The notes under the pieces were generated by a model. It saw nothing but the letters and a program-made list of their open reading frames with translations, was not told the origin of the DNA and searched no databases. This document shows positions 38,956 through 47,512 of a stretch of DNA of 64,000 bases, piece after piece (within the stretch, counting starts at the first letter, position 1; the number at the start of each line of letters is the position of its first letter). A program made the translations under genes and the position numbers. This DNA is from Macrostomum lignano. Its lineage: Eukaryota. The stretch is from the NCBI GenBank assembly GCA_002269645.1, contig NIVC01001733.1:180345-244344 (forward strand), read 5' to 3'.

Positions 38956-39300
<345 letters not shown>

Positions 39301-39372: not shown

Positions 39373-42101
39373 TCAGGCCATCTCGTTGCTGCAAGATACG
39401 CCGTTATTGGCGGTGTAGAACTTGACGTTGCACTGCGCCTCTGGCACGGCGTAGGCTGCGTAAAGCTTCGGCGCGAACATGATGGCCAGCAGCAGGCCGT
39501 GGGTCAGCACGCAAGAGAACACCATCAACTTGACGGCGGTGGCCAATGTGGTTGCCGTCAACGCAGCCGGGGTGAATGCCGCCCAGAGGAAGAGCGCGGA
39601 GGCGCCGGCCGCCAAGATGCACTTGCTGTCGTGAAAATTGTCGGGTAGTTGACGGGTTCGCAGCGCCAGCAGGCAGGTGGTGCCCAATAGGGTCAAGTTG
39701 CAGCCCAGCGGAGCCCAGAAGCTGACGGTCATGAGGTCGCACTGCCGCTCCACCCACGGCTTCGAGTCGGACGTTGTCGAGGCCGACTGACGGATGCGCG
39801 ACTGCACGGGCCAGCGGAGACTGAGCCCAATGATGATGCCAGTCTGCAATGTTTTGTAGAAAATGGACAGGTAGTTTTTGGGTTGATAAGGCCGGTCAGC
39901 ATCCCAGATCCCCATGCCTCACCATCAGCAGGACGAGACCAGCCAGCATCGCAGAAATCGGGCGCTGCCTTGCCAACTGCGGCGTCGGCCGGCCCGCCCC
40001 GGACGCTCTGAACACCAACAGGATGCGCAGTGTCTTCACCAGCTGGCTGCAGTAGCAAACCGACAGGCCCAGCTGGGTGGCGGCGTTCGCGCAGCAGCAG
40101 GCAACGTCGGAAGCCTCAACTGCGATGGGTGCCAGGCCGGACAGACCGAGAAGGCTGCCGCAAAGGCAGGCCACCTGTTAGAAACAATTTAAAATGGTAA
40201 TTCGAGTTCCACACTAACAACTGCCACCAGTCTTGCCTTACCGACAGCTGCACCGAGGACGCCTTGACTAGCCGATGCTCCCGCCGGTGCAGCAGCAACA
40301 GCAGCGCAGTCAGTGTCAATGCGGCCAGGAGGGCCGCGCACACCAGGAGCCCCGGCAGCAGGAGATCGTCGTTCCAGCCGGCGACAGGCAACGGCTGGCA
40401 GGTCTCGGCCTCTGGCCAGGAGAACGTTGGGCAGGGCAGGCAGGCGAGGCCGTCCGAACCGGCGATTTCGCCCGGGAAGCAGGCGCGGCAGGTGAAGCAG
40501 CAGGCGTCGGTGGGCACCCGGATGTGGCCGGCTGGGCAGGGCGGGCTGCAGAACGAGGCCGCCGGTGCAGCAGTTTGGTTGTCCCAAACCCTCAGGCTGG
40601 AGCGCTGCGTCCATCGGGCGAACAATTTGAGCTCGCCGTCGGCTTCCTCGTGGCGCACGTCGTAGGCAGGCGCGGCGTCGCCGCTGGAGTCGAAGCCGTC
40701 AAAGTCAGCGATAAAATGCCGACGAGCTGTTGTTGAAAAATTTGACGCAGCAATGAGGGTGGAGATTCGAGGGCCAGTGATGCAGCTGAGTAGCTGGCTG
40801 AGGTTTCCCTCTGCGACGCTCGGCTGACACTCTTCGCTTAGGGCGACCGATTGGACGCTGTCGGCGATGAGCGTCAGCGAGTCCAGCATGCGAGCCAGCG
40901 GAGCCACTTTAACGCTGAGGCTTAAACGCGACAGAGAGGCGACCTTGGCACTGCACCCAGCTGATGTGACGTTGCCAGCAGCTGTGCAATTGCCACCGGA
41001 GAGAACCCTCTGCAGCTGAAAGCCGAACGGGAACTCCACCAGCTGGGCGAGGTTTAACGAGTGGTAAAAGCGGAGCAAGTCTGGCACGGGAAACTGCGGA
41101 AAGGCTACGTAGAAGGCGCCCTGAGTGTAGTCTTTGTACGAATCGGCGTTCGTGTCGGAGGTGATGATGGTGCCACCGCGGGAGGCGATGCGGGCAAGCA
41201 GCCTGTCGGGCACCAGGCTGAACAGTTCGTACACGAGGAACACGGTCAAGTTTTGCCGAGAGTCGATGGCGTCCAGCGCGTCGGATACGGAAGTGAGCTG
41301 GTTCAACGCCAGGGTGAAGGCAACGCACACCGGTGCAGAATATTCGCTGGAGTTGCCTCCTTCGCTCGGTGCCGCAGCGAGCAGGAGCCTGGTGTTTTGC
41401 GCGAGGCCCCTCCCGTACACGTCGTCTCTGTGGATGATGGCCACGTAGGTCCAGCCGAAGTGGCGCACCAGCTGCACTGCGGCTCTGGCCTGGTGGCGAT
41501 CCGTTGACACCAGCCGGTAGACGTTCGGGTACCGCTCCCGGTCCGAGAACGCGTCGCTGCTGGACTCGGTGGACACCTGCGGCAGCTGGTAGGGCGACAG
41601 CAGACGTGACACAATGTCCGTGGTGCTGCTGTACCAGGCGGCCGCAGCGGCCTGAATGAGATAGACCGACTCCTCGATGCCGCTGAGCCGCTGAGAGCAG
41701 AAGGCGCCTCCGGCTGCAAGGGCGCCGTGCTGCCAGGCAGGGCGCAGGTTCTTCGTCAGACTGACGGCTGCGGCTGACGACATGCAGGGGTCCAAATGGA
41801 CGAAGCCGAACGTCCATCCGCGTGCGCGCAGCTCCGGGCGCAGCTGCTCCCTGTTGATTCTGTCGACAGCAAAGTGGACGGCGAGTCCTCGCAAGAACTG
41901 CGCCTCCGTGATGGGAAACTCCGCCTCGGCGCTGAGGCAGTTGAACTCAGAGTTCTGCACGATGGCCAAGTTGAAGACGCCGTCGCGACAGAATAGCTGC
42001 TGGTGGCAGTGAGCCGCCAGCAGAAGCTGCTGTAGCAGCAATAGAGAGATGAGCATGGAGAGGCTTGGACGGGCTGGCAGGCTGGCGGCAGACCAGCACA
42101 T
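39373..42101 (-). CDS. Class C GPCR (mGluR/CaSR-like): Venus flytrap + cysteine-rich domain + 7TM
   Basis: Exons 42101-40242, 40174-39923 and 39843-39373 (phase 0). Motifs: signal peptide; QLPQVSTESSSDAFSDRERYP; FGWTYVAII; CSPPCPAG..CCFTCRAC..CLPC; LVKASS; LVKTLRI; QLPDNFHDSK; MFAPKLY. Confidence 0.92.
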
Positions 42102-42635
42102 CGCCCGCAGCTGACCTGCCCAAATCCAGGCCAGTCAGGGCCTGCTCGTGCATTCCTGATTCGGTCAGCAGTTCGGCGGCCAATCCGGCGAATTTTTTCC
42201 CCGGCAGCAGGGTCTGCCAAGCAAATCAAAGCAAAGCCTCGATGCTTATCGATCGGGTCAAGCTTAATCACCTCTACAGTGTGACCTGCTGACAAGTGTG
42301 TGTATGAGAGAGTCAGAGGGCAGCACGATGCTTTTCCGGTGCACCCCGCACCGCAGAACAATGCAGAGCAGTGCAATCCAGTGAGCATACTCGTAGCATT
42401 TCTGCAGAGTGGGTCACCTCCAGGCAAATCTGCGCCAAAACAGTCTGCTCTCGAGCTCGATAAGAGAGGACAGCAAAAACAACAAGCTGATTAGATAAGA
42501 AATCTCGCACGGTGCCAGCTCTGTATTTATGGCGCGGCAACTCGCGGCCAGCTCAGACAACTCAGAGAGCCGGCCCTTCTTAGCTGATTTTTTAACACAA
42601 GTAAGCTTTACTCAGAACCCCCTGCAAGTCTCTGA

Positions 42636-43130
42636 ATGGCGCTCAAACTGCAGCTCAGTCTGGCTCTGGCGCTCACCGTGCTGGCTGCCTCGCTGCGGAC
42701 AGGCCACAGCTGCAACAGCGGAAACAGGGGCGGCTCCGGCTCCGAGTCCATCACCGACTCCGGCTCCGGCCGCCCCGTCCGCGTTTCCGGCTACGTCCTG
42801 CTGAACCCGGCACCGCAGCAGCTGCCAGTCAACACCCGTCTCGAAGTTCGCCTACAGGACATCTCGCTGATGGACGCGCCGTCGAAGCTGCTTGGCAGCC
42901 AGACGCTCAACTCGGTGTCGACGAGTTACAACGCCGACCGCCGGATCCCCTTCAGCCTGGAGGCGGTGATCCCTGCGGACACGCCCTTCATGCCCCACTC
43001 GGTGTCCGTGTCGGCCTCCTTGCGTGGCGACGGCGTCTCCTACATCACCGACACTGCCTACTACGTTAACCTTCAGGAGGGCACCTTCGAGTACCGCGAC
43101 ATGGAGATCACCATCATCAAGTACCCGTGA
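42636..43130 (+). CDS. ybaY: Secreted YbaY/YscW-like (bacterial lipoprotein/pilotin family) protein, intronless
   Basis: Signal peptide, Cys and a Gly/Ser linker, then VSGYV..LP..L.V.LQDISLMDAPSKLL..PFSL..PAD..SAS..YITDT. This matches the motif order recalled for E. coli YbaY (VSGTV..LP..L.V.LSDASLADAPSKVL..PFSF..PAD..SAA..FITDT). Confidence 0.82.
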   Translation: MALKLQLSLALALTVLAASLRTGHSCNSGNRGGSGSESITDSGSGRPVRVSGYVLLNPAPQQLPVNTRLEVRLQDISLMDAPSKLLGSQTLNSVSTSYNADRRIPFSLEAVIPADTPFMPHSVSVSASLRGDGVSYITDTAYYVNLQEGTFEYRDMEITIIKYP

Positions 43131-43431: not shown

Positions 43432-46400
43432 TCAATTGTCCGTGGCGAAGTAGTAAGGCAGCAATGAGCTGTTCCTCAGGTACAGCAAACAGCAGATGGA
43501 CTGGAAAACTCTCAGGTAGCACAACAGCAGCACCACCACCACGACTGAGTCGACTGGCCACGGCACCAATTCGAGGCACTTCTGCACCACCTCCACGTTG
43601 ACGTCGTCCAATAGAAAGTTTCTCTCTAAGAGCAGTGCGGAGTAGCATTTGGCTTCTGCCCCATTCTGTCCAGTTTTTATCCCGTTTCTGTCCGGTTCCT
43701 GTCCAGTTTCTGTCCAGTTTCTGTCCCCATTCTGTCCGGTTCCTTTCCAGTTTCTGTCCGGCTTCTGCCCCCATTCTGTCCAGTTTCTGTCCAGTTTCTG
43801 TCCAGTTTCTGTCCCCATTCTGTCCGGTTCCTTTCCAGTTTCTGTCCGGCTTCTGCCCCCATTCTGTCCAGTTTCTGTCCAGTTTCTGTCCAGTTTCTAT
43901 CCCGTTTCTGTCCAGTTTCTGTCCAGTTTCTGTCCGGCTTCTGCCCCCATTCTGTCCAGTTTCTGTCCAGTTTCTGTCCAGTTTCTGTCCGGTTCCTGTC
44001 CAGTTTCTGTCCGGCTTCTGCCCCTATTCTGTCCAGTTTCTGTCCAGTTTCTGTCCCCATTCTATCCCGTTTCTGTCCTGTTTCTGTCCAGTTTCTGTCC
44101 AGTTTCTGTCCTGTTTCTGTCCAGTTTTTGTCCAGTTTCTGTCCTGTTTCTGTCCAGTTTCTGTCCAGTTTCTGTCCTGTTTCTGTCCAGTTTCTGTCCC
44201 CATTCTATCCCATTTTTAGCCAGTTTCTGTCCAGTTTCCGTCCGGTTTCTGTCCAGTTTCTGTCCGGTTTCTGTCCAGTTTCTGTCCAGTTTCTGTCCGG
44301 TTTCTGTCCAGTTTCTGTCCAGTTTCTGTCCAGTTTCTGTCCAGTTTCTGTCCCCATTCTGTCCAGTTTCTGTCCGGCTTCTGTCCCCATTCTGTCCGGT
44401 TCCTGTTCCAGTTCCAAGCAGCAGAGCCGGCGCTTACCCAGCAGTTTGGGCACCAGCGGGTCGGTCCTGGTGATGGCCACGGTCATCAGGATGTACACGT
44501 TGGCCAGCAGGAAGCTCAGGCCGCACACCACATTTTCAACTTGGCGAAAGCGAAGCACCGTGGCAAAGAAGCCCATCAGGCCGACTGGGCGTTGAGCAGG
44601 TGGGGTGGAAGACCTGCTGCGTCACCAGCTACTGCCATTCCCTGTGCCATTCCCTGTGCCATTCCCTGTGCCATTCCCTGTGCCATTCCCTGTGCCATTC
44701 CCTGTGCCATTCCCTGTGCCATTCCCTGTGCCATTCCCTGTGCCATTCCCTGTGCCATTCCCTGTGCCATTCCCTGTGCCATTCCCTGTGCCATTTCCTG
44801 TGCCATTCCCTGTGCCATTCCCTGTGCCATTCCCTGTGCCATTCTCTGTGCCATTCCCTGTGCCATTCCCTGTGCCATTTCCTGTGCCATTCCCTGTGCC
44901 ATTCCCTGTACCATTCCCTGTGCCATTCCCTGTGCCATTCCCTGTGCCATTCCCTGTGCCATTCCCTGTGCCATTCCCTGTGCCATTCTCTGTGCCATTC
45001 CCTGTGCCATTCCCTGTGCCATTCCCTGTGCCATTCCCTGTGCCATTCCCTGTGCCATTCCCTGTGCCATTACCTGTGCCATTACCTACTGCCATTCCCT
45101 GTGCCATTCCCTGTGCCATTCCCTGTGTCATTACCTACTGCCATTCACTGTGCCATTCCCTGTGCCATTACCTACTGCCATTCACTGTACCATTCCCTGT
45201 GCCATTACCTACTGCCATTCACTGTGCCATTCCCTGTGCCATTCCCTGTGCCATTCTCTGTGCCATTCCCTGTGCCATTCCCTGTGCCATTACCTGTGCC
45301 ATTACCTACTGCCATTCCCTGTGCCATTCCCTGTGCCATTCCCTGTGTCATTACCTACTGCCATTCACTGTGCCATTCCCTGTGCCATTACCTACTGCCA
45401 TTCACTGTGCCATTCCCTGTGCCATTTCCTGTGCCATTCTCTGTGCCATTCCCTGTGCCATTCCCTGTGCCATTCCCTGTGCTATTCCCTGTACCATTCC
45501 CTGTGCCATTCCCTGTGCCATTCCCTGTGCCATTCCCTGTGCCATTCCCTGTGCCATTCCCTGTGCCATTCTCTGTGCCATTCCCTGTGCCATTCCCTGT
45601 GCCATTCCCTGTGCCATTCCCTGTGCCATTCCCTGTGCCATTCCCTGTGCCATTCCCTGTGCCATTCCCTGTGCCATTCCCTGTGCCATTCCCTGTGCCA
45701 TTACCTACTGCCATTCACTGTGCCATTCCCTGTGCCATTACCTACTGCCATTCACTGTGCCATTCCCTGTGCCATTACCTACTGCCATTCACTGTGCCAT
45801 TCCCTGTGCCATTACCTACTGCCATTCACTGTGCCATTCCCTGTGCCATTACCTACTGCCATTCACTGTGCCATTCCCTGTGCCATTACCTACTGCCATT
45901 CACTGTGCCATTCCCTGTGCCATTACCTACTGCCATTCACTGTGCCATTCCCTGTGCCATTACCTACTGCCATTCACTGTGCCATTCCCTGTGCCATTCC
46001 CTGTGCCATTCTCTGTGCCATTCCCTGTGCCATTCCCTGTGCCATTCCCTGTGCCATTCCCTGTGCCATTCCCTGTGCCATTCCCTGTGCCATTCCCTGT
46101 GCCATTCTCTGTGCCATTCCCTGTGCCATTCCCTGTGCCATTACCTACTGCCATTCACTGTGCCATTCCCTGTGCCATTACCTACTGCCATTCACTGTGC
46201 CATTCCCTGTGCCATTACCTACTGCCATTCACTGTGCCATTCCCTGTGCCATTACCTACTGCCATTCCCTGTGCCATTCCCTGTGCCATTACCTACTGCC
46301 ATTCACTGTGCCATTCCCTGTGCCATTACCTACTGCCATTCACTGTGCCATTCCCTGTGCCATTACCTACTGCCATTCCCTGTGCCATTCCCTGTGCCAT

Positions 46401-46690
46401 TACCTACTGCCATTCACTGTGCCACTATCTACTGCCATTCCATGTGCCATTACCTACTGCCATCCCCAAAACCACGCCCCTGTCTTACCCGCCATGCTCT
46501 CCCCGTTGATCACGAAGCCGAGCATGGTGGCCTTGTACATGATGCAGTCGATGTTGGACACGTCCTTGGAAATTTCCTTGGTGCGCACTTTGCGCCTGAG
46601 GCTCTGCGACAGCACGGTGAAAATTGTCAGCGTGGCGCCGCTCAGCATAACAAGGATGTAGCAGCTTGCTGCGATAAATCTTGTGGTCAT
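43432..46690 (-). CDS. Tetraspanin-like four-TM protein with a short extracellular loop
   Basis: Exons 46690-46489, 44584-44438 and 43625-43432 (both junctions phase 1). Four hydrophobic helices; TM2 ends in a [10 protein letters not shown] motif; no CCG. Confidence 0.65.
43650..44415 (+). repeat. 11-bp minisatellite (gtccagtttct), intronic
   Basis: Direct reading. Confidence 0.94.
44630..46465 (+). repeat. 12-bp satellite (gccattccctgt) with 37-bp higher-order units, intronic
   Basis: Direct reading; source of the 700-aa spurious ORFs. Confidence 0.96.
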
Positions 46691-46869: not shown

Positions 46870-47086
46870 TAATTAATCAATCGATCAGTCAATCAGTCGA
46901 TCAGTCAATCAATCAATCAATCACTCAATCAACCAATCAATCACTCAATCAATCAGTCAATCACTCAATCAACCAATCAATCACTCAATCAATCAATCAA
47001 TCCATCAATCAATCAATCACTCAATCAATCAATCAATCGATCAATCAATCCATCAATAATCAATCCACCAACCAACCAATCAATCA

Positions 47087-47125
<39 letters not shown>

Positions 47126-47218
47126 CATCAATAATCAATCAATCAATCAATCGATCAATCAATCCATCAATAATCAATCCACCAACCAACCAATCAATCA
47201 AACAATCAATCAATCAAT

Positions 47219-47251
<33 letters not shown>

Positions 47252-47287
47252 CATCAATAATCAATCCACCAACCAACCAATCAATCA

Positions 47288-47322
<35 letters not shown>

Positions 47323-47358
47323 CATCAATAATCAATCCACCAACCAACCAATCAATCA

Positions 47359-47393
<35 letters not shown>

Positions 47394-47400
47394 CATCAAT

Positions 47401-47433
<33 letters not shown>

Positions 47434-47512
47434 GTCAGTCAGTCAGTCAATCAATCGATTAATCAATCAATCAATCAATGATTCAACCAATCAATCAATC
47501 AATCAATTAACC
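46870..47512 (+). repeat. (TCAA)n microsatellite
   Basis: Direct reading. Confidence 0.95.

What the first reader, a model, noticed from the sequence alone, without database searches (positions are those of the whole stretch)
42636..43130. Bacterial-type YbaY/YscW lipoprotein gene embedded among animal genes (horizontal-transfer candidate)
Seen: an intronless 164-aa ORF with a signal peptide, a Cys followed by a Gly/Ser tether, and the motif string VSG.V-LP-L.V.L.D.SL.DAPSK.L-PFS-PAD-SA-ITDT. It sits 534 bp from an intron-containing GPCR and 301 bp from a spliced 4-TM gene, so contamination is unlikely unless the assembly is chimeric. Known: YbaY/YscW (PF09619) are Gram-negative outer-membrane lipoproteins or pilotins. 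Inference: this is a domesticated bacterial gene. It keeps the lipoprotein layout, but the lipobox has degenerated (GHSC), and it may act as a secreted binding, chaperone, mucus or defence protein.
Basis: partly seen in the sequence, partly recalled or inferred. Interest (0 to 1): 0.8.

Follow-up and report, generated by a model that had tools for sequence, protein, structure and literature searches.

The report
Flatworm gene with bacterial YbaY fold
A real, intronless flatworm (Macrostomum lignano) gene encodes a small secreted protein with a fold otherwise typical of bacterial outer-membrane lipoproteins, but its nearest relatives are other animal genes (a flatworm paralogue and stony-coral genes), so it looks like a member of an old, unannotated eukaryotic branch of that family, not a fresh bacterial import.

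Summary
ORF 42636-43130(+) encodes 164 aa: a signal-like segment, one Cys, a Gly/Ser linker and an all-beta domain. The domain passes Pfam PF09619 (33.2 bits against a 22.6 cut-off), and its confident AlphaFold model matches PDB 5wec (Vibrio cholerae YbaY-like pilotin; target-normalised TM 0.74). The window is Macrostomum lignano contig NIVC01001733.1.

Contamination is excluded. A second contig carries the same gene in the same 20-kb animal context, codon usage is host-like, and the flanking GPCR is spliced.

No prokaryote among 185,579 species genomes is more than about 43% identical. The best single-domain matches are an M. lignano paralogue and stony-coral proteins. The window protein groups with these in 73-80% of NJ bootstraps and shares their C-terminal signature. 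One related marine eukaryotic gene has introns.

The gene is best read as the most bacteria-like member of a patchy, unannotated eukaryotic YbaY-like clade. That clade is probably of old bacterial origin, not a recent flatworm-specific transfer. An independent transfer is not excluded (about 0.27).

Function is inferred: a secreted, non-lipidated binding module. One weak lead comes from the nearest prokaryote-style relatives, which sit beside astacin protease genes.

The parts
42636..43130 (+). Complete intronless CDS (164 aa plus stop) of the YbaY/YscW-fold protein
   Evidence: ORF; PF09619 at 33.2 bits; identical to the annotated 164-aa product on NIVC01001733.1
42636..42710 (+). Signal-peptide-like N-terminus (residues 1-25: MALK, then a 15-residue hydrophobic core, then LRTGHS), directly followed by the only Cys (C26, codon 42711-42713)
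   Evidence: Read directly from the sequence. pLDDT is about 53. GHSC does not fit the bacterial lipobox pattern. No signal-peptide predictor was available.
42714..42767 (+). Gly/Ser-rich, low-complexity linker (residues 27-44)
   Evidence: AlphaFold pLDDT below 55, and below 50 for residues 31-38; composition read from the sequence
42768..43127 (+). All-beta YbaY/YscW-fold domain (residues 45-164, 8 strands)
   Evidence: pLDDT 82-97; Foldseek 5wec_A E 3e-8 with target-normalised TM 0.74, and 2yjl (ExsB) target-normalised TM 0.55
42858..42884 (+). Family-wide conserved loop D75-I-S-L-M-D80-A-P-S between strands 2 and 3; candidate binding site
   Evidence: D75 and D80 are invariant, and S77, A81 and P82 at least 90% conserved, across 25 bacterial and eukaryotic sequences. 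The loop position comes from the model's secondary structure. The binding role is inferred.
43053..43127 (+). C-terminal segment (residues 140-164: TAYYVNLQEGTFEYRDMEITIIKYP) carrying the eukaryote-type signature
   Evidence: Residues 130-164 score 15.9 bits on the animal-type HMM, 4.9 on the bacterial HMM and 0.0 on the 'odd' group HMM. Y153 is invariant in the eukaryote-type alignment.
42524..42529 (+). TATTTA box about 30 nt upstream of the 5' end of the transcript-derived gene model of the sister copy (equivalent to window position ~42559); candidate core promoter
   Evidence: Motif position. The P0002 model starts at NSESRPF, which corresponds to window 42559. Gene models are transcript-derived (PMC5730564). 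The promoter role is inferred.

Best explanation
The ORF is a genuine, expressed Macrostomum lignano nuclear gene. It encodes a small secreted protein: a cleavable signal peptide, a disordered Gly/Ser linker, and one 120-residue beta-sandwich of the YbaY/YscW (PF09619) fold. It belongs to a patchily distributed and essentially unannotated eukaryotic clade of this otherwise prokaryotic family. Other members are a signal-less M. lignano paralogue, abundant cytosolic and membrane-anchored single-domain proteins of stony corals, and multi-repeat, intron-bearing genes of unidentified marine and soil eukaryotes. Within that clade it is the most bacteria-like member. It lacks the NVGW...EW.RKGDY insertion, it has the highest Pfam score, and it has a lipoprotein-like N-terminal layout. 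The clade probably descends from an old bacterium-to-eukaryote transfer, not a recent flatworm-specific one. Mechanism (inferred): the protein enters the secretory pathway and is not lipidated, because animals lack Lgt, LspA and Lnt. It then acts outside the cell as a non-enzymatic binding module. It would grip a partner through the conserved D-x-S-L-x-D-A-P-S loop end of the sandwich, much as bacterial pilotins of this fold grip a peptide of their secretin. The partner is unknown. The only lead is that the nearest prokaryote-style relatives are encoded beside astacin metalloproteases, so an astacin-family protease is a candidate.
For: Gene reality and integration. The CDS is intact, with an upstream in-frame stop. 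The source contig is 244 kb, and a second contig is collinear for about 20 kb at roughly 96-98% with the gene 99% identical at the same position. GC3 is 0.87 against 0.78 for the GPCR exon, with RSCU r = 0.87. The neighbours are a spliced family-3 GPCR and a protein kinase. The GenBank models come from RNA-seq-guided transcripts.
Family. PF09619 scores above the gathering cut-off. The AlphaFold domain is confident. Foldseek's top hit is 5wec, with ExsB (2yjl) also found.
Eukaryotic clade. An exhaustive phmmer search of 1.84 billion representatives gave only 34 hits. These include M. lignano paralogues, Montipora, Mortierellaceae fungi and eukaryote-like unknowns. A profile search added about 20 coral-type clusters, including Stylophora. 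The top single-domain BLASTP hits are P0006/P0035 and then corals. The animal-type HMM scores 57-59 bits against 47-49 for the bacterial HMM. NJ bootstrap support is 161/200 and, after adding 21 best prokaryotic domains, 73/100. The C-terminal signature is shared with the animal type only. A relative in a Tara Oceans scaffold has introns, one of them inside the domain.
No close donor. The best match in 185,579 prokaryotic species genomes is 30-43% identical over partial alignments.
Astacin lead. YbaY-like genes P0027 and P0033 sit beside astacin genes on two compact contigs of very different GC content. None of 80 ordinary bacterial loci shows this.
Against: Support for the clade is only moderate. 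It rests on about 110 aligned columns and distance trees, and long-branch attraction between the divergent window protein and the divergent eukaryotic clade cannot be excluded. In the N-terminal half of the domain the bacterial-type HMMs score as well or better (41-44 against 37 bits). A four-sequence 'odd' group, partly shown to lie in prokaryote-style contexts, scores almost as high overall as the animal HMM (55.6 against 57.4). No orthologue of the window-type gene itself was found in any other animal. The signal-Cys-linker layout is what a bacterial lipoprotein precursor looks like. Expression is inferred from how the annotation was built, not seen directly, and no supplementary table mentioning the gene was found. 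The sister copy carries a 1-bp deletion in the CDS. No astacin gene lies in the window or in the fetched animal loci, so the partner hypothesis rests on two prokaryote-style contigs only.
Confidence: 0.55

Rival explanations
1. Independent and relatively recent horizontal transfer of a bacterial YbaY-family lipoprotein gene into the Macrostomum lineage. In this view it is separate from the event that produced the P0006/coral-type genes, and the signal-Cys-linker N-terminus is a direct vestige of the bacterial lipoprotein precursor.
For: The window protein has the highest and most complete Pfam match of all the eukaryotic members: 33.2 bits over profile positions 5-98, against 21-24 bits over the N-terminal half only for P0006, P0057 and P0041. 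It lacks the NVGW...EW.RKGDY insertion of the animal type. Its N-terminal half scores slightly higher on the bacterial HMMs. Its single Cys after the hydrophobic segment, followed by a disordered linker, matches the layout of outer-membrane lipoproteins. No orthologue was found in other animals. It is intronless.
Against: No prokaryote among 185,579 species genomes exceeds about 43% identity, and then only over partial alignments. Codon usage is fully host-like. The closest single-domain hit is the M. lignano paralogue, followed by corals. In 73-80% of bootstraps the protein lies with the animal clade. The C-terminal 35 residues score about 11 bits higher on the animal-type HMM than on the bacterial one. 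GHSC is not a lipobox.
Confidence: 0.27
2. Assembly artefact: bacterial contaminant DNA joined chimerically to flatworm DNA.
For: The family is overwhelmingly prokaryotic, the gene has no introns, and the assembly is repeat-rich and built from long reads.
Against: Two independently assembled contigs (244 kb and 109 kb) carry the gene at the same position between the same neighbours, with about 20 kb of collinearity. GC3 and RSCU match the host. The flanks are host-type AT-rich intergenic DNA and host tandem arrays. There are no other bacterial-type genes nearby, and no near-identical bacterial sequence exists.
Confidence: 0.02
3. A decaying or non-functional relic: an ORF that survives by chance after transfer or duplication and has no present function.
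For: The sister copy has a 1-bp deletion that shifts the frame. No expression data for the gene could be retrieved. No orthologues were available, so purifying selection could not be measured.
Against: The window copy is intact, keeps every family-invariant residue (G52, D75, D80) and folds confidently. A 495-bp ORF with a complete signal peptide is unlikely to persist at this divergence (about 36% identity to its paralogue) without selection. The deletion in the sister copy sits in a GG dinucleotide and may be an assembly error. Gene models exist only where transcripts were assembled.
Confidence: 0.1
4. Ancient vertical inheritance: the domain was already present in early eukaryotes or early animals and was lost almost everywhere, with no transfer from bacteria.
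For: Members occur in animals (Cnidaria, Platyhelminthes), in fungi (Mortierellaceae) and in unidentified eukaryotes. Some have introns.
Against: The fungal sequences do not group with the animal-type clade but with bacterial ones. The eukaryotic clade nests within bacterial diversity. The distribution is extremely sparse despite a search of 1.84 billion representative proteins. This scenario would need very many independent losses.
Confidence: 0.06

Closest known systems
PDB 5wec: YbaY-like lipoprotein of Vibrio cholerae, deposited as 'an alternative pilotin from the type II secretion system'
   Same: Same fold and recognisable sequence homology. Foldseek gives E 3e-8, target-normalised TM 0.74 and 28% identity; phmmer gives E 6e-4. 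The L.DVSL.DAP loop and the SVSA...ITDT strands are shared.
   Different: 5wec is a bacterial lipoprotein working in the periplasm with a secretin. The window protein is made in an animal, which has no lipoprotein-processing machinery and no secretins. It also has a different C-terminal strand region (EG..EY..DMEI..IKY).
YscW / ExsB type III secretion pilotins (Pfam PF09619 namesake; PDB 2yjl)
   Same: Same Pfam family and the same beta-sandwich topology (2yjl target-normalised TM 0.55, probability about 1.0).
   Different: Only about 10% identity in the structural alignment. A pilotin function needs a cognate secretin and Lol-dependent sorting, and both are absent from animals.
E. coli YbaY and the 'YbaY family lipoprotein' annotation of bacterial genomes
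   Same: The bacterial relatives retrieved are annotated this way. They have a single or repeated domain with the same conserved loop, a lipoprotein signal and a disordered linker.
   Different: Identity is at most about 43%. The function of YbaY is itself unknown; the literature search found only omics mentions. The window protein lacks a lipobox.
Eukaryote-type YbaY-like proteins: M. lignano PAA66317.1 / PAA94389.1, Stylophora pistillata PFX24036.1, Montipora XP_068754246.1 / XP_068699677.1 (all 'hypothetical' or 'uncharacterized')
   Same: These are the best single-domain hits (36% and 31-36% identity). They share the C-terminal signature and the invariant Y153 and lie in the same clade in 73-80% of bootstraps. 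P0006, P0012 and P0057 are also single-exon genes in eukaryotic DNA.
   Different: They carry an insertion of about 12 residues (NVGW...EW.RKGDY) that the window protein lacks. They have either no signal peptide or an N-terminal membrane anchor, where the window protein has a cleavable signal plus linker. They score at or below the Pfam threshold.
Serralysin inhibitor pairs (AprA/AprI, Inh); functional analogy only, recalled from established knowledge
   Same: A small beta-rich protein encoded next to a secreted metzincin protease. This matches the context seen for the YbaY-like genes P0027 and P0033 beside astacins.
   Different: A different fold and family. No biochemical evidence exists for any YbaY-like protein, and no astacin gene lies next to the window gene.

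Membership tests
Pfam PF09619 (YscW/YbaY domain) | Sequence score above the curated gathering cut-off | tested here: met
   33.2 bits against 22.6, E 7.3e-8, profile positions 5-98 of 107
Pfam PF09619 (YscW/YbaY domain) | The beta-sandwich fold of solved family members | tested here: met
   AlphaFold domain pLDDT above 90; Foldseek 5wec_A E 3e-8 with target-normalised TM 0.74, and 2yjl target-normalised TM 0.55
Pfam PF09619 (YscW/YbaY domain) | The conserved L.D[VI]SL.DAP loop | tested here: met
   LQDISLMDAPS at residues 73-83; D75 and D80 are invariant across 25 sequences
Bacterial lipoprotein (Lgt/LspA/Lnt substrate) | Lipobox [LVI][ASTVI][GAS]C at the end of the signal peptide | tested here: not met
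   The residues before C26 are G-H-S, with Arg21 lying between the hydrophobic core and the Cys
Bacterial lipoprotein (Lgt/LspA/Lnt substrate) | A host that has the lipoprotein maturation and Lol sorting machinery | not testable with these tools
   The host is an animal. Animals lack Lgt, LspA and Lnt; this is established knowledge and was not tested here.
Secretin pilotin (YscW/ExsB/5wec function) | A cognate secretin to pilot, usually encoded in the same secretion-system locus | tested here: not met
   The neighbours are a family-3 GPCR, a small membrane protein gene and a protein kinase. Secretins are not known in animals (established knowledge).
Recent prokaryote-to-animal HGT | Closest relatives are prokaryotic, with a clear margin over any eukaryote (alien-index logic) | tested here: not met
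   The whole-protein E-values are close: best prokaryote 1.1e-8, M. lignano paralogue 1.9e-7, coral-type 6e-6. At the single-domain level the eukaryotes rank first, and the animal HMM scores above the bacterial HMM.
Recent prokaryote-to-animal HGT | Phylogenetic nesting inside a specific donor lineage | tested here: not met
   No donor lineage was found, and identity is at most about 43%. The NJ trees place the protein with the eukaryotic clade in 161/200 and 73/100 bootstraps. These are distance methods only.
Recent prokaryote-to-animal HGT | Physical integration in host DNA (not contamination) | tested here: met
   Two collinear contigs, host-like codon usage and spliced animal neighbours
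Eukaryote-type YbaY-like clade (coral / M. lignano P0006 type; defined here) | C-terminal signature V.[LIV].[ED]G...Y..D[IMV].[IL]..[IV].[YH] | tested here: met
   VNLQEGTFEYRDMEITIIKY. Residues 130-164 score 15.9 bits on the animal HMM against 4.9 on the bacterial HMM.
Eukaryote-type YbaY-like clade (coral / M. lignano P0006 type; defined here) | The NVGW...EW.RKGDY insertion before the ..DT strand | tested here: not met
   The window protein has SLRGDGVSYITDT with no insertion. It is therefore a basal or atypical member, if it is a member at all.
Eukaryote-type YbaY-like clade (coral / M. lignano P0006 type; defined here) | Monophyly with the clade in a tree | tested here: inconclusive
   73-80% NJ bootstrap support. 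No model-based phylogeny was possible, and long-branch attraction is not excluded.

The most novel reading that the evidence does not exclude
The window gene and its coral, flatworm and plankton relatives form an undescribed eukaryotic branch of the YbaY/YscW fold. In this reading the branch descends from prokaryotic partner proteins of secreted astacin-type metalloproteases (inhibitors or chaperones encoded next to the protease). The secreted flatworm protein would then be an endogenous regulator of astacin proteases, a new class of metzincin inhibitor in invertebrates.
Probability: 0.1. Interest if true: 0.7.

Novelty: new member of a known kind. Interest (0 to 1): 0.4.

Why it matters
Bacterial-type genes in animal genomes are a known phenomenon, and this one is well documented as integrated. 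What the analysis adds has three parts. First, a textbook-looking 'fresh HGT' dissolves on inspection into membership of an older, patchy eukaryotic subfamily. This is a caution for alien-index style screens. Second, that subfamily is seen in stony corals, Macrostomum, and unidentified marine and soil eukaryotes. It sits at or below Pfam's threshold and appears nowhere in the searched literature. In corals it forms many protein clusters, recovered on many short contigs, so a family of unknown function is available for study. Third, the function of YbaY itself is unknown in bacteria. The astacin neighbourhood of the relatives closest to the eukaryotic clade gives a concrete hypothesis that can be tested in both kingdoms.

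Tried and rejected
NCBIfam gave no hit.

The first word-indexed homology search found only the gene itself and its sister copy. The third search, with a profile of the non-coral eukaryotic members, added only four fragments.

The search for related loci with the broad 25-sequence alignment failed because it had no conserved stretch. It was repeated with a 5-sequence alignment.

Literature searches for Mlig025402, for YbaY with HGT or eukaryotes, for PF09619, and for Macrostomum with HGT found nothing about this gene or about eukaryotic YbaY-like proteins. Supplementary tables of two M. lignano papers do not mention the gene or its paralogues.

There is no further copy in the window by tblastn.

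The astacin signature was searched in the window, in five animal loci and in 80 bacterial loci. It is absent from all of them; the one HExxHxxxxxH match in the window lies in a His/Arg simple repeat.

A Scoredist-based bootstrap run did not return. Only Kimura-distance NJ results are reported.

Contamination was considered and rejected (see rivals).

The alignments of bacterial signal peptides to query residues 10 onward were treated as compositional, not as evidence of N-terminal homology.
Full report
OBSERVATION. The product has three parts. The first is a classical n-h-c signal-peptide layout (MALK, a 15-residue hydrophobic core, then LRTGHS). The second is a single cysteine (C26) followed by a Gly/Ser-rich stretch. 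The spacing to the neighbours, 534 bp and 301 bp, is also correct.

This is not a chance ORF. Pfam PF09619 (YscW) is matched at 33.2 bits against a gathering cut-off of 22.6, E 7.3e-8, over profile positions 5-98 of 107. The PDB sequence search finds 5wec at E 6e-4. An AlphaFold2 model built on a 25-sequence alignment has pLDDT above 90 over most of residues 45-164, with eight beta strands. Residues 1-44 are disordered. Foldseek against the PDB returns 5wec_A (E 3e-8, target-normalised TM 0.74, 28% identity) and, more weakly, the T3SS pilotin ExsB, 2yjl (target-normalised TM 0.55). The family assignment is therefore confirmed by sequence and by predicted fold.

WHERE IT IS. The exact protein is annotated on Macrostomum lignano assembly GCA_002269645.1, contig NIVC01001733.1 (244 kb). 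A second contig, NIVC01003246.1 (109 kb), carries a sister copy, BOX15_Mlig025402g2. The two loci are collinear for about 20 kb at roughly 96-98% identity. Both have the same called genes on either side: a Fumble/pantothenate kinase gene upstream and a spliced 180-aa gene downstream. This fits the 180 Mb of blocks at least 95% identical that were reported for this assembly of a karyotypically duplicated line (PMC5730564).

The two gene copies differ by one non-synonymous substitution, one synonymous substitution, a 1-bp deletion in the 5' leader, and a 1-bp deletion in a GG dinucleotide inside the CDS. The last change is either a frameshift or a long-read error.

The upstream neighbour is a family-3 GPCR. 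Its ANF_receptor, NCD3G and 7tm_3 parts are spread over at least three exons in three frames. A protein-kinase exon lies further downstream. Codon usage of the gene is host-like: GC3 is 0.87 against 0.78 for the GPCR exon, and RSCU r = 0.87. The flanking intergenic DNA drops to 35-53% GC. Contamination or chimerism is therefore very unlikely.

The GenBank gene models were derived from a genome-guided RNA-seq transcriptome. The sister-copy model begins, as a 5'-partial CDS, at the equivalent of window position 42559. That is about 30 nt downstream of a TATTTA box at 42524. This is indirect evidence for transcription from a eukaryotic-type promoter. I could not retrieve direct expression values.

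WHO ELSE HAS IT. An exhaustive phmmer search of 1.84 billion representative proteins gave only 34 hits below E 1e-3, and none beyond the two M. lignano copies was better than E 1e-8. The hits are a mixture:
- Bacterial 'YbaY family lipoproteins', often with 2-5 tandem domains.
- Two further M. lignano proteins of 140 aa (PAA66317.1 and PAA94389.1).
- Montipora coral proteins.
- Mortierellaceae fungal proteins.
- Several unnamed sequences that look eukaryotic.

A profile of the eukaryote-type sequences retrieved about 20 more clusters, mostly 122-124 aa. One contains Stylophora pistillata PFX24036.1. Others sit on contigs of up to 1.6 Mb, or on many roughly 1-kb contigs assembled from public sequencing runs.

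The M. lignano paralogue is a single-exon gene next to a Meis/PKNOX homeobox gene and has no signal peptide. Two coral-type genes are also single-exon in eukaryote-like DNA. A 956-aa five-repeat relative (P0005) maps to a Tara Oceans scaffold as at least three exons, with gaps of about 470-980 bp and one exon boundary inside the domain. A further member lies on an AT-rich, mRNA-like 1.5-kb contig in a JGI sample.

The animal-type members score at or just below the Pfam threshold: 24.1, 22.4 and 21.1 bits. That explains why this branch is essentially unannotated. No paper in the searchable library mentions it.

PLACING THE WINDOW PROTEIN. At the single-domain level the best BLASTP hits are the M. 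lignano paralogue (36% identity, 65 bits) followed by coral proteins (55-63 bits). HMMs built without the query gave these scores:
- Animal type: 57.4 bits (51.1 without the paralogue), aligned over residues 48-163.
- Bacterial type: 47.3 bits, aligned over residues 49-148.
- Fungal type: 32.6 bits.
- A small 'odd' group (P0026, P0027, P0029, P0033): 55.6 bits.

The paralogue P0006 is unambiguously coral-type: 106 bits against 31.

In NJ trees of 65 non-redundant domains, the window protein lies inside a bacteria-free clade with at least 10 of the 11 animal sequences in 161 of 200 bootstraps. I then added 21 non-redundant domains taken from the best prokaryotic matches among 185,579 species genomes. 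With those included, and with fungal sequences also excluded from the clade, the figure is 73 of 100.

The affinity is regional. Residues 45-100 score 41-44 bits on the bacterial-type HMMs against 37 on the animal HMM. Residues 130-164 score 15.9 on the animal HMM against 4.9 and 0.0. This reflects the shared ending V.L.EG..EY..D[IM].[IL]..I.Y, with Y153 invariant among the eukaryote-type sequences. The window protein lacks the NVGW...EW.RKGDY insertion of the animal type. In the prokaryotic genome scan the best matches (Aliivibrio/Vibrio, Sphingopyxis, Variovorax, Rhodobacteraceae, some Methanosarcinales) are 30-43% identical over partial alignments, so no donor lineage is identifiable.

INTERPRETATION. 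The gene is best read as the most bacteria-like, possibly basal, member of a sparse eukaryotic clade of the YbaY/YscW fold. That clade nests within bacterial diversity in the NJ tree. An old bacterium-to-eukaryote transfer is therefore the likeliest ultimate origin, possibly followed by eukaryote-to-eukaryote spread or by massive loss. A recent flatworm-specific acquisition is the less likely reading.

I put about 0.55 on the main reading and about 0.27 on an independent, later transfer into the Macrostomum lineage. The rival is favoured by the lipoprotein-like N-terminal layout, the fuller Pfam match and the absence of window-type orthologues elsewhere. Four limits apply. The alignment is short, at about 110 columns. 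Only distance methods were available. Long-branch attraction is possible. The taxonomic identity of most unnamed relatives is inferred from a few named ones.

HOW IT PROBABLY WORKS.
Shown: the domain architecture, the fold, the conserved loop D75-x-S-L-x-D80-A-P-S between strands 2 and 3, and the lack of a lipobox.
From established knowledge: animals have no Lgt/LspA/Lnt lipoprotein pathway and no secretins. The protein can therefore be neither a lipoprotein nor a pilotin in the worm.
Inferred: it is secreted through the ER, and the Gly/Ser stretch is a flexible N-terminal tail. The beta-sandwich would act as a non-enzymatic binding module that uses the conserved loop end, by analogy with pilotins that clasp a secretin peptide. 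The function of bacterial YbaY itself is unknown.

One lead emerged from two contigs with compact, prokaryote-like gene arrangements and very different GC content, 55% and 28%. They encode P0027 and P0033, YbaY-like proteins that lie near the eukaryotic clade in the tree. Both place the gene next to astacin metalloprotease genes. In one, it lies 47 bp downstream on the same strand. In the other, a subtilase and a second astacin fragment are also present. None of 80 ordinary bacterial YbaY loci has an astacin signature within 2 kb. This suggests that the subgroup may be a protease partner, either an inhibitor or a chaperone. Flatworms and corals are rich in astacins (established knowledge). But no astacin lies near the window gene or in the fetched animal loci. 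I rate this at roughly 0.1.

VERDICT. This is a new member of a known kind: a bacterial-type domain gene resident in an animal genome. The added value is that it exposes an unannotated eukaryotic subfamily, and that it shows how an apparent fresh HGT can be an older family member. Interest is about 0.4.

Noticed in passing
L090:794-2894; L091:572-4238 (also L092): YbaY-like genes P0027 and P0033, which lie near the eukaryotic clade in the tree, sit next to astacin (PF01400) metalloprotease genes on two compact contigs of very different GC content (55% and 28%). In one, the gene lies 47 bp downstream on the same strand. In the other, a Peptidase_S8 gene and a second astacin fragment are also present. 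The astacin zinc signature is absent from 80 ordinary bacterial YbaY loci.
   Followed up: partly
L089:1-1860 (Tara Oceans scaffold TARA_SAMEA2621793_METAG-scaffold_33511): A five-repeat, Cys-rich, Thr-rich 956-aa YbaY-like protein (P0005) maps here as at least three exons, with gaps of about 470-980 bp and one exon boundary inside the domain. This is an intron-bearing eukaryotic member from an unidentified marine organism.
   Followed up: partly
window 39376-42101 (-): A family-3 GPCR (ANF_receptor, NCD3G, and 7tm_3 split over at least three exons in three frames) is clearly encoded. It is not among the called genes of the GenBank annotation for this contig.
   Followed up: partly
window 43664-44413 and 44633-46467: Two large tandem arrays fill the gap between the coding parts of the downstream 180-aa minus-strand gene. 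One is an 11-nt-based array (33/44-nt periods, about 750 bp). The other is about 151 copies of the 12-mer TGCCATTCCCTG (1.8 kb). Both arrays also occur in the sister locus L001.
   Followed up: no
window 38956-39288 and 46871-47507: There are long microsatellites: (AGT)x111 just downstream of the last GPCR exon, and (AATC)x161 upstream of the small membrane-protein gene.
   Followed up: no
L001:10001-10570 (sister copy, contig NIVC01003246.1): The sister copy has a 1-bp deletion in a GG dinucleotide of the CDS. The deposited model (P0002, 189 aa) is therefore out of frame for its first two thirds. This is either a real pseudogenisation of one duplicate or an assembly indel.
   Followed up: partly
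L003:8001-8423 (contig NIVC01001569.1); also PAA94389.1 on a 2.39-Mb contig: M. lignano has a second type of YbaY-like gene, in two copies. It is 140 aa as deposited, starts at MSQQPIRVHG with no signal peptide, and is coral-like with the NVGW...EWVRKGDY insertion. It lies next to a Meis/PKNOX homeobox gene.
   Followed up: partly
P0006, P0057, P0041 (proteins): Animal-type members score 24.1, 22.4 and 21.1 bits on PF09619 (cut-off 22.6) and match only the N-terminal half of the model. The coral/flatworm subfamily is therefore largely invisible to Pfam-based annotation.
   Followed up: yes
P0008/P0039, P0018, P0022 (Mortierellaceae fungi: Gamsiella, Gryganskiella, Lunasporangiospora): Two-domain YbaY-like proteins occur in Mortierellaceae fungi. 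In the NJ tree they group apart from the animal-type clade, which suggests a separate acquisition.
   Followed up: no
L014, L029, L061, L065 (Methanosarcinales / Methanobacteriota genomes): Archaeal genomes also encode domains with the D[VI]SL[MA]DAPS motif, at 35-38% identity to the window protein. The family is therefore not restricted to Gram-negative bacteria.
   Followed up: no
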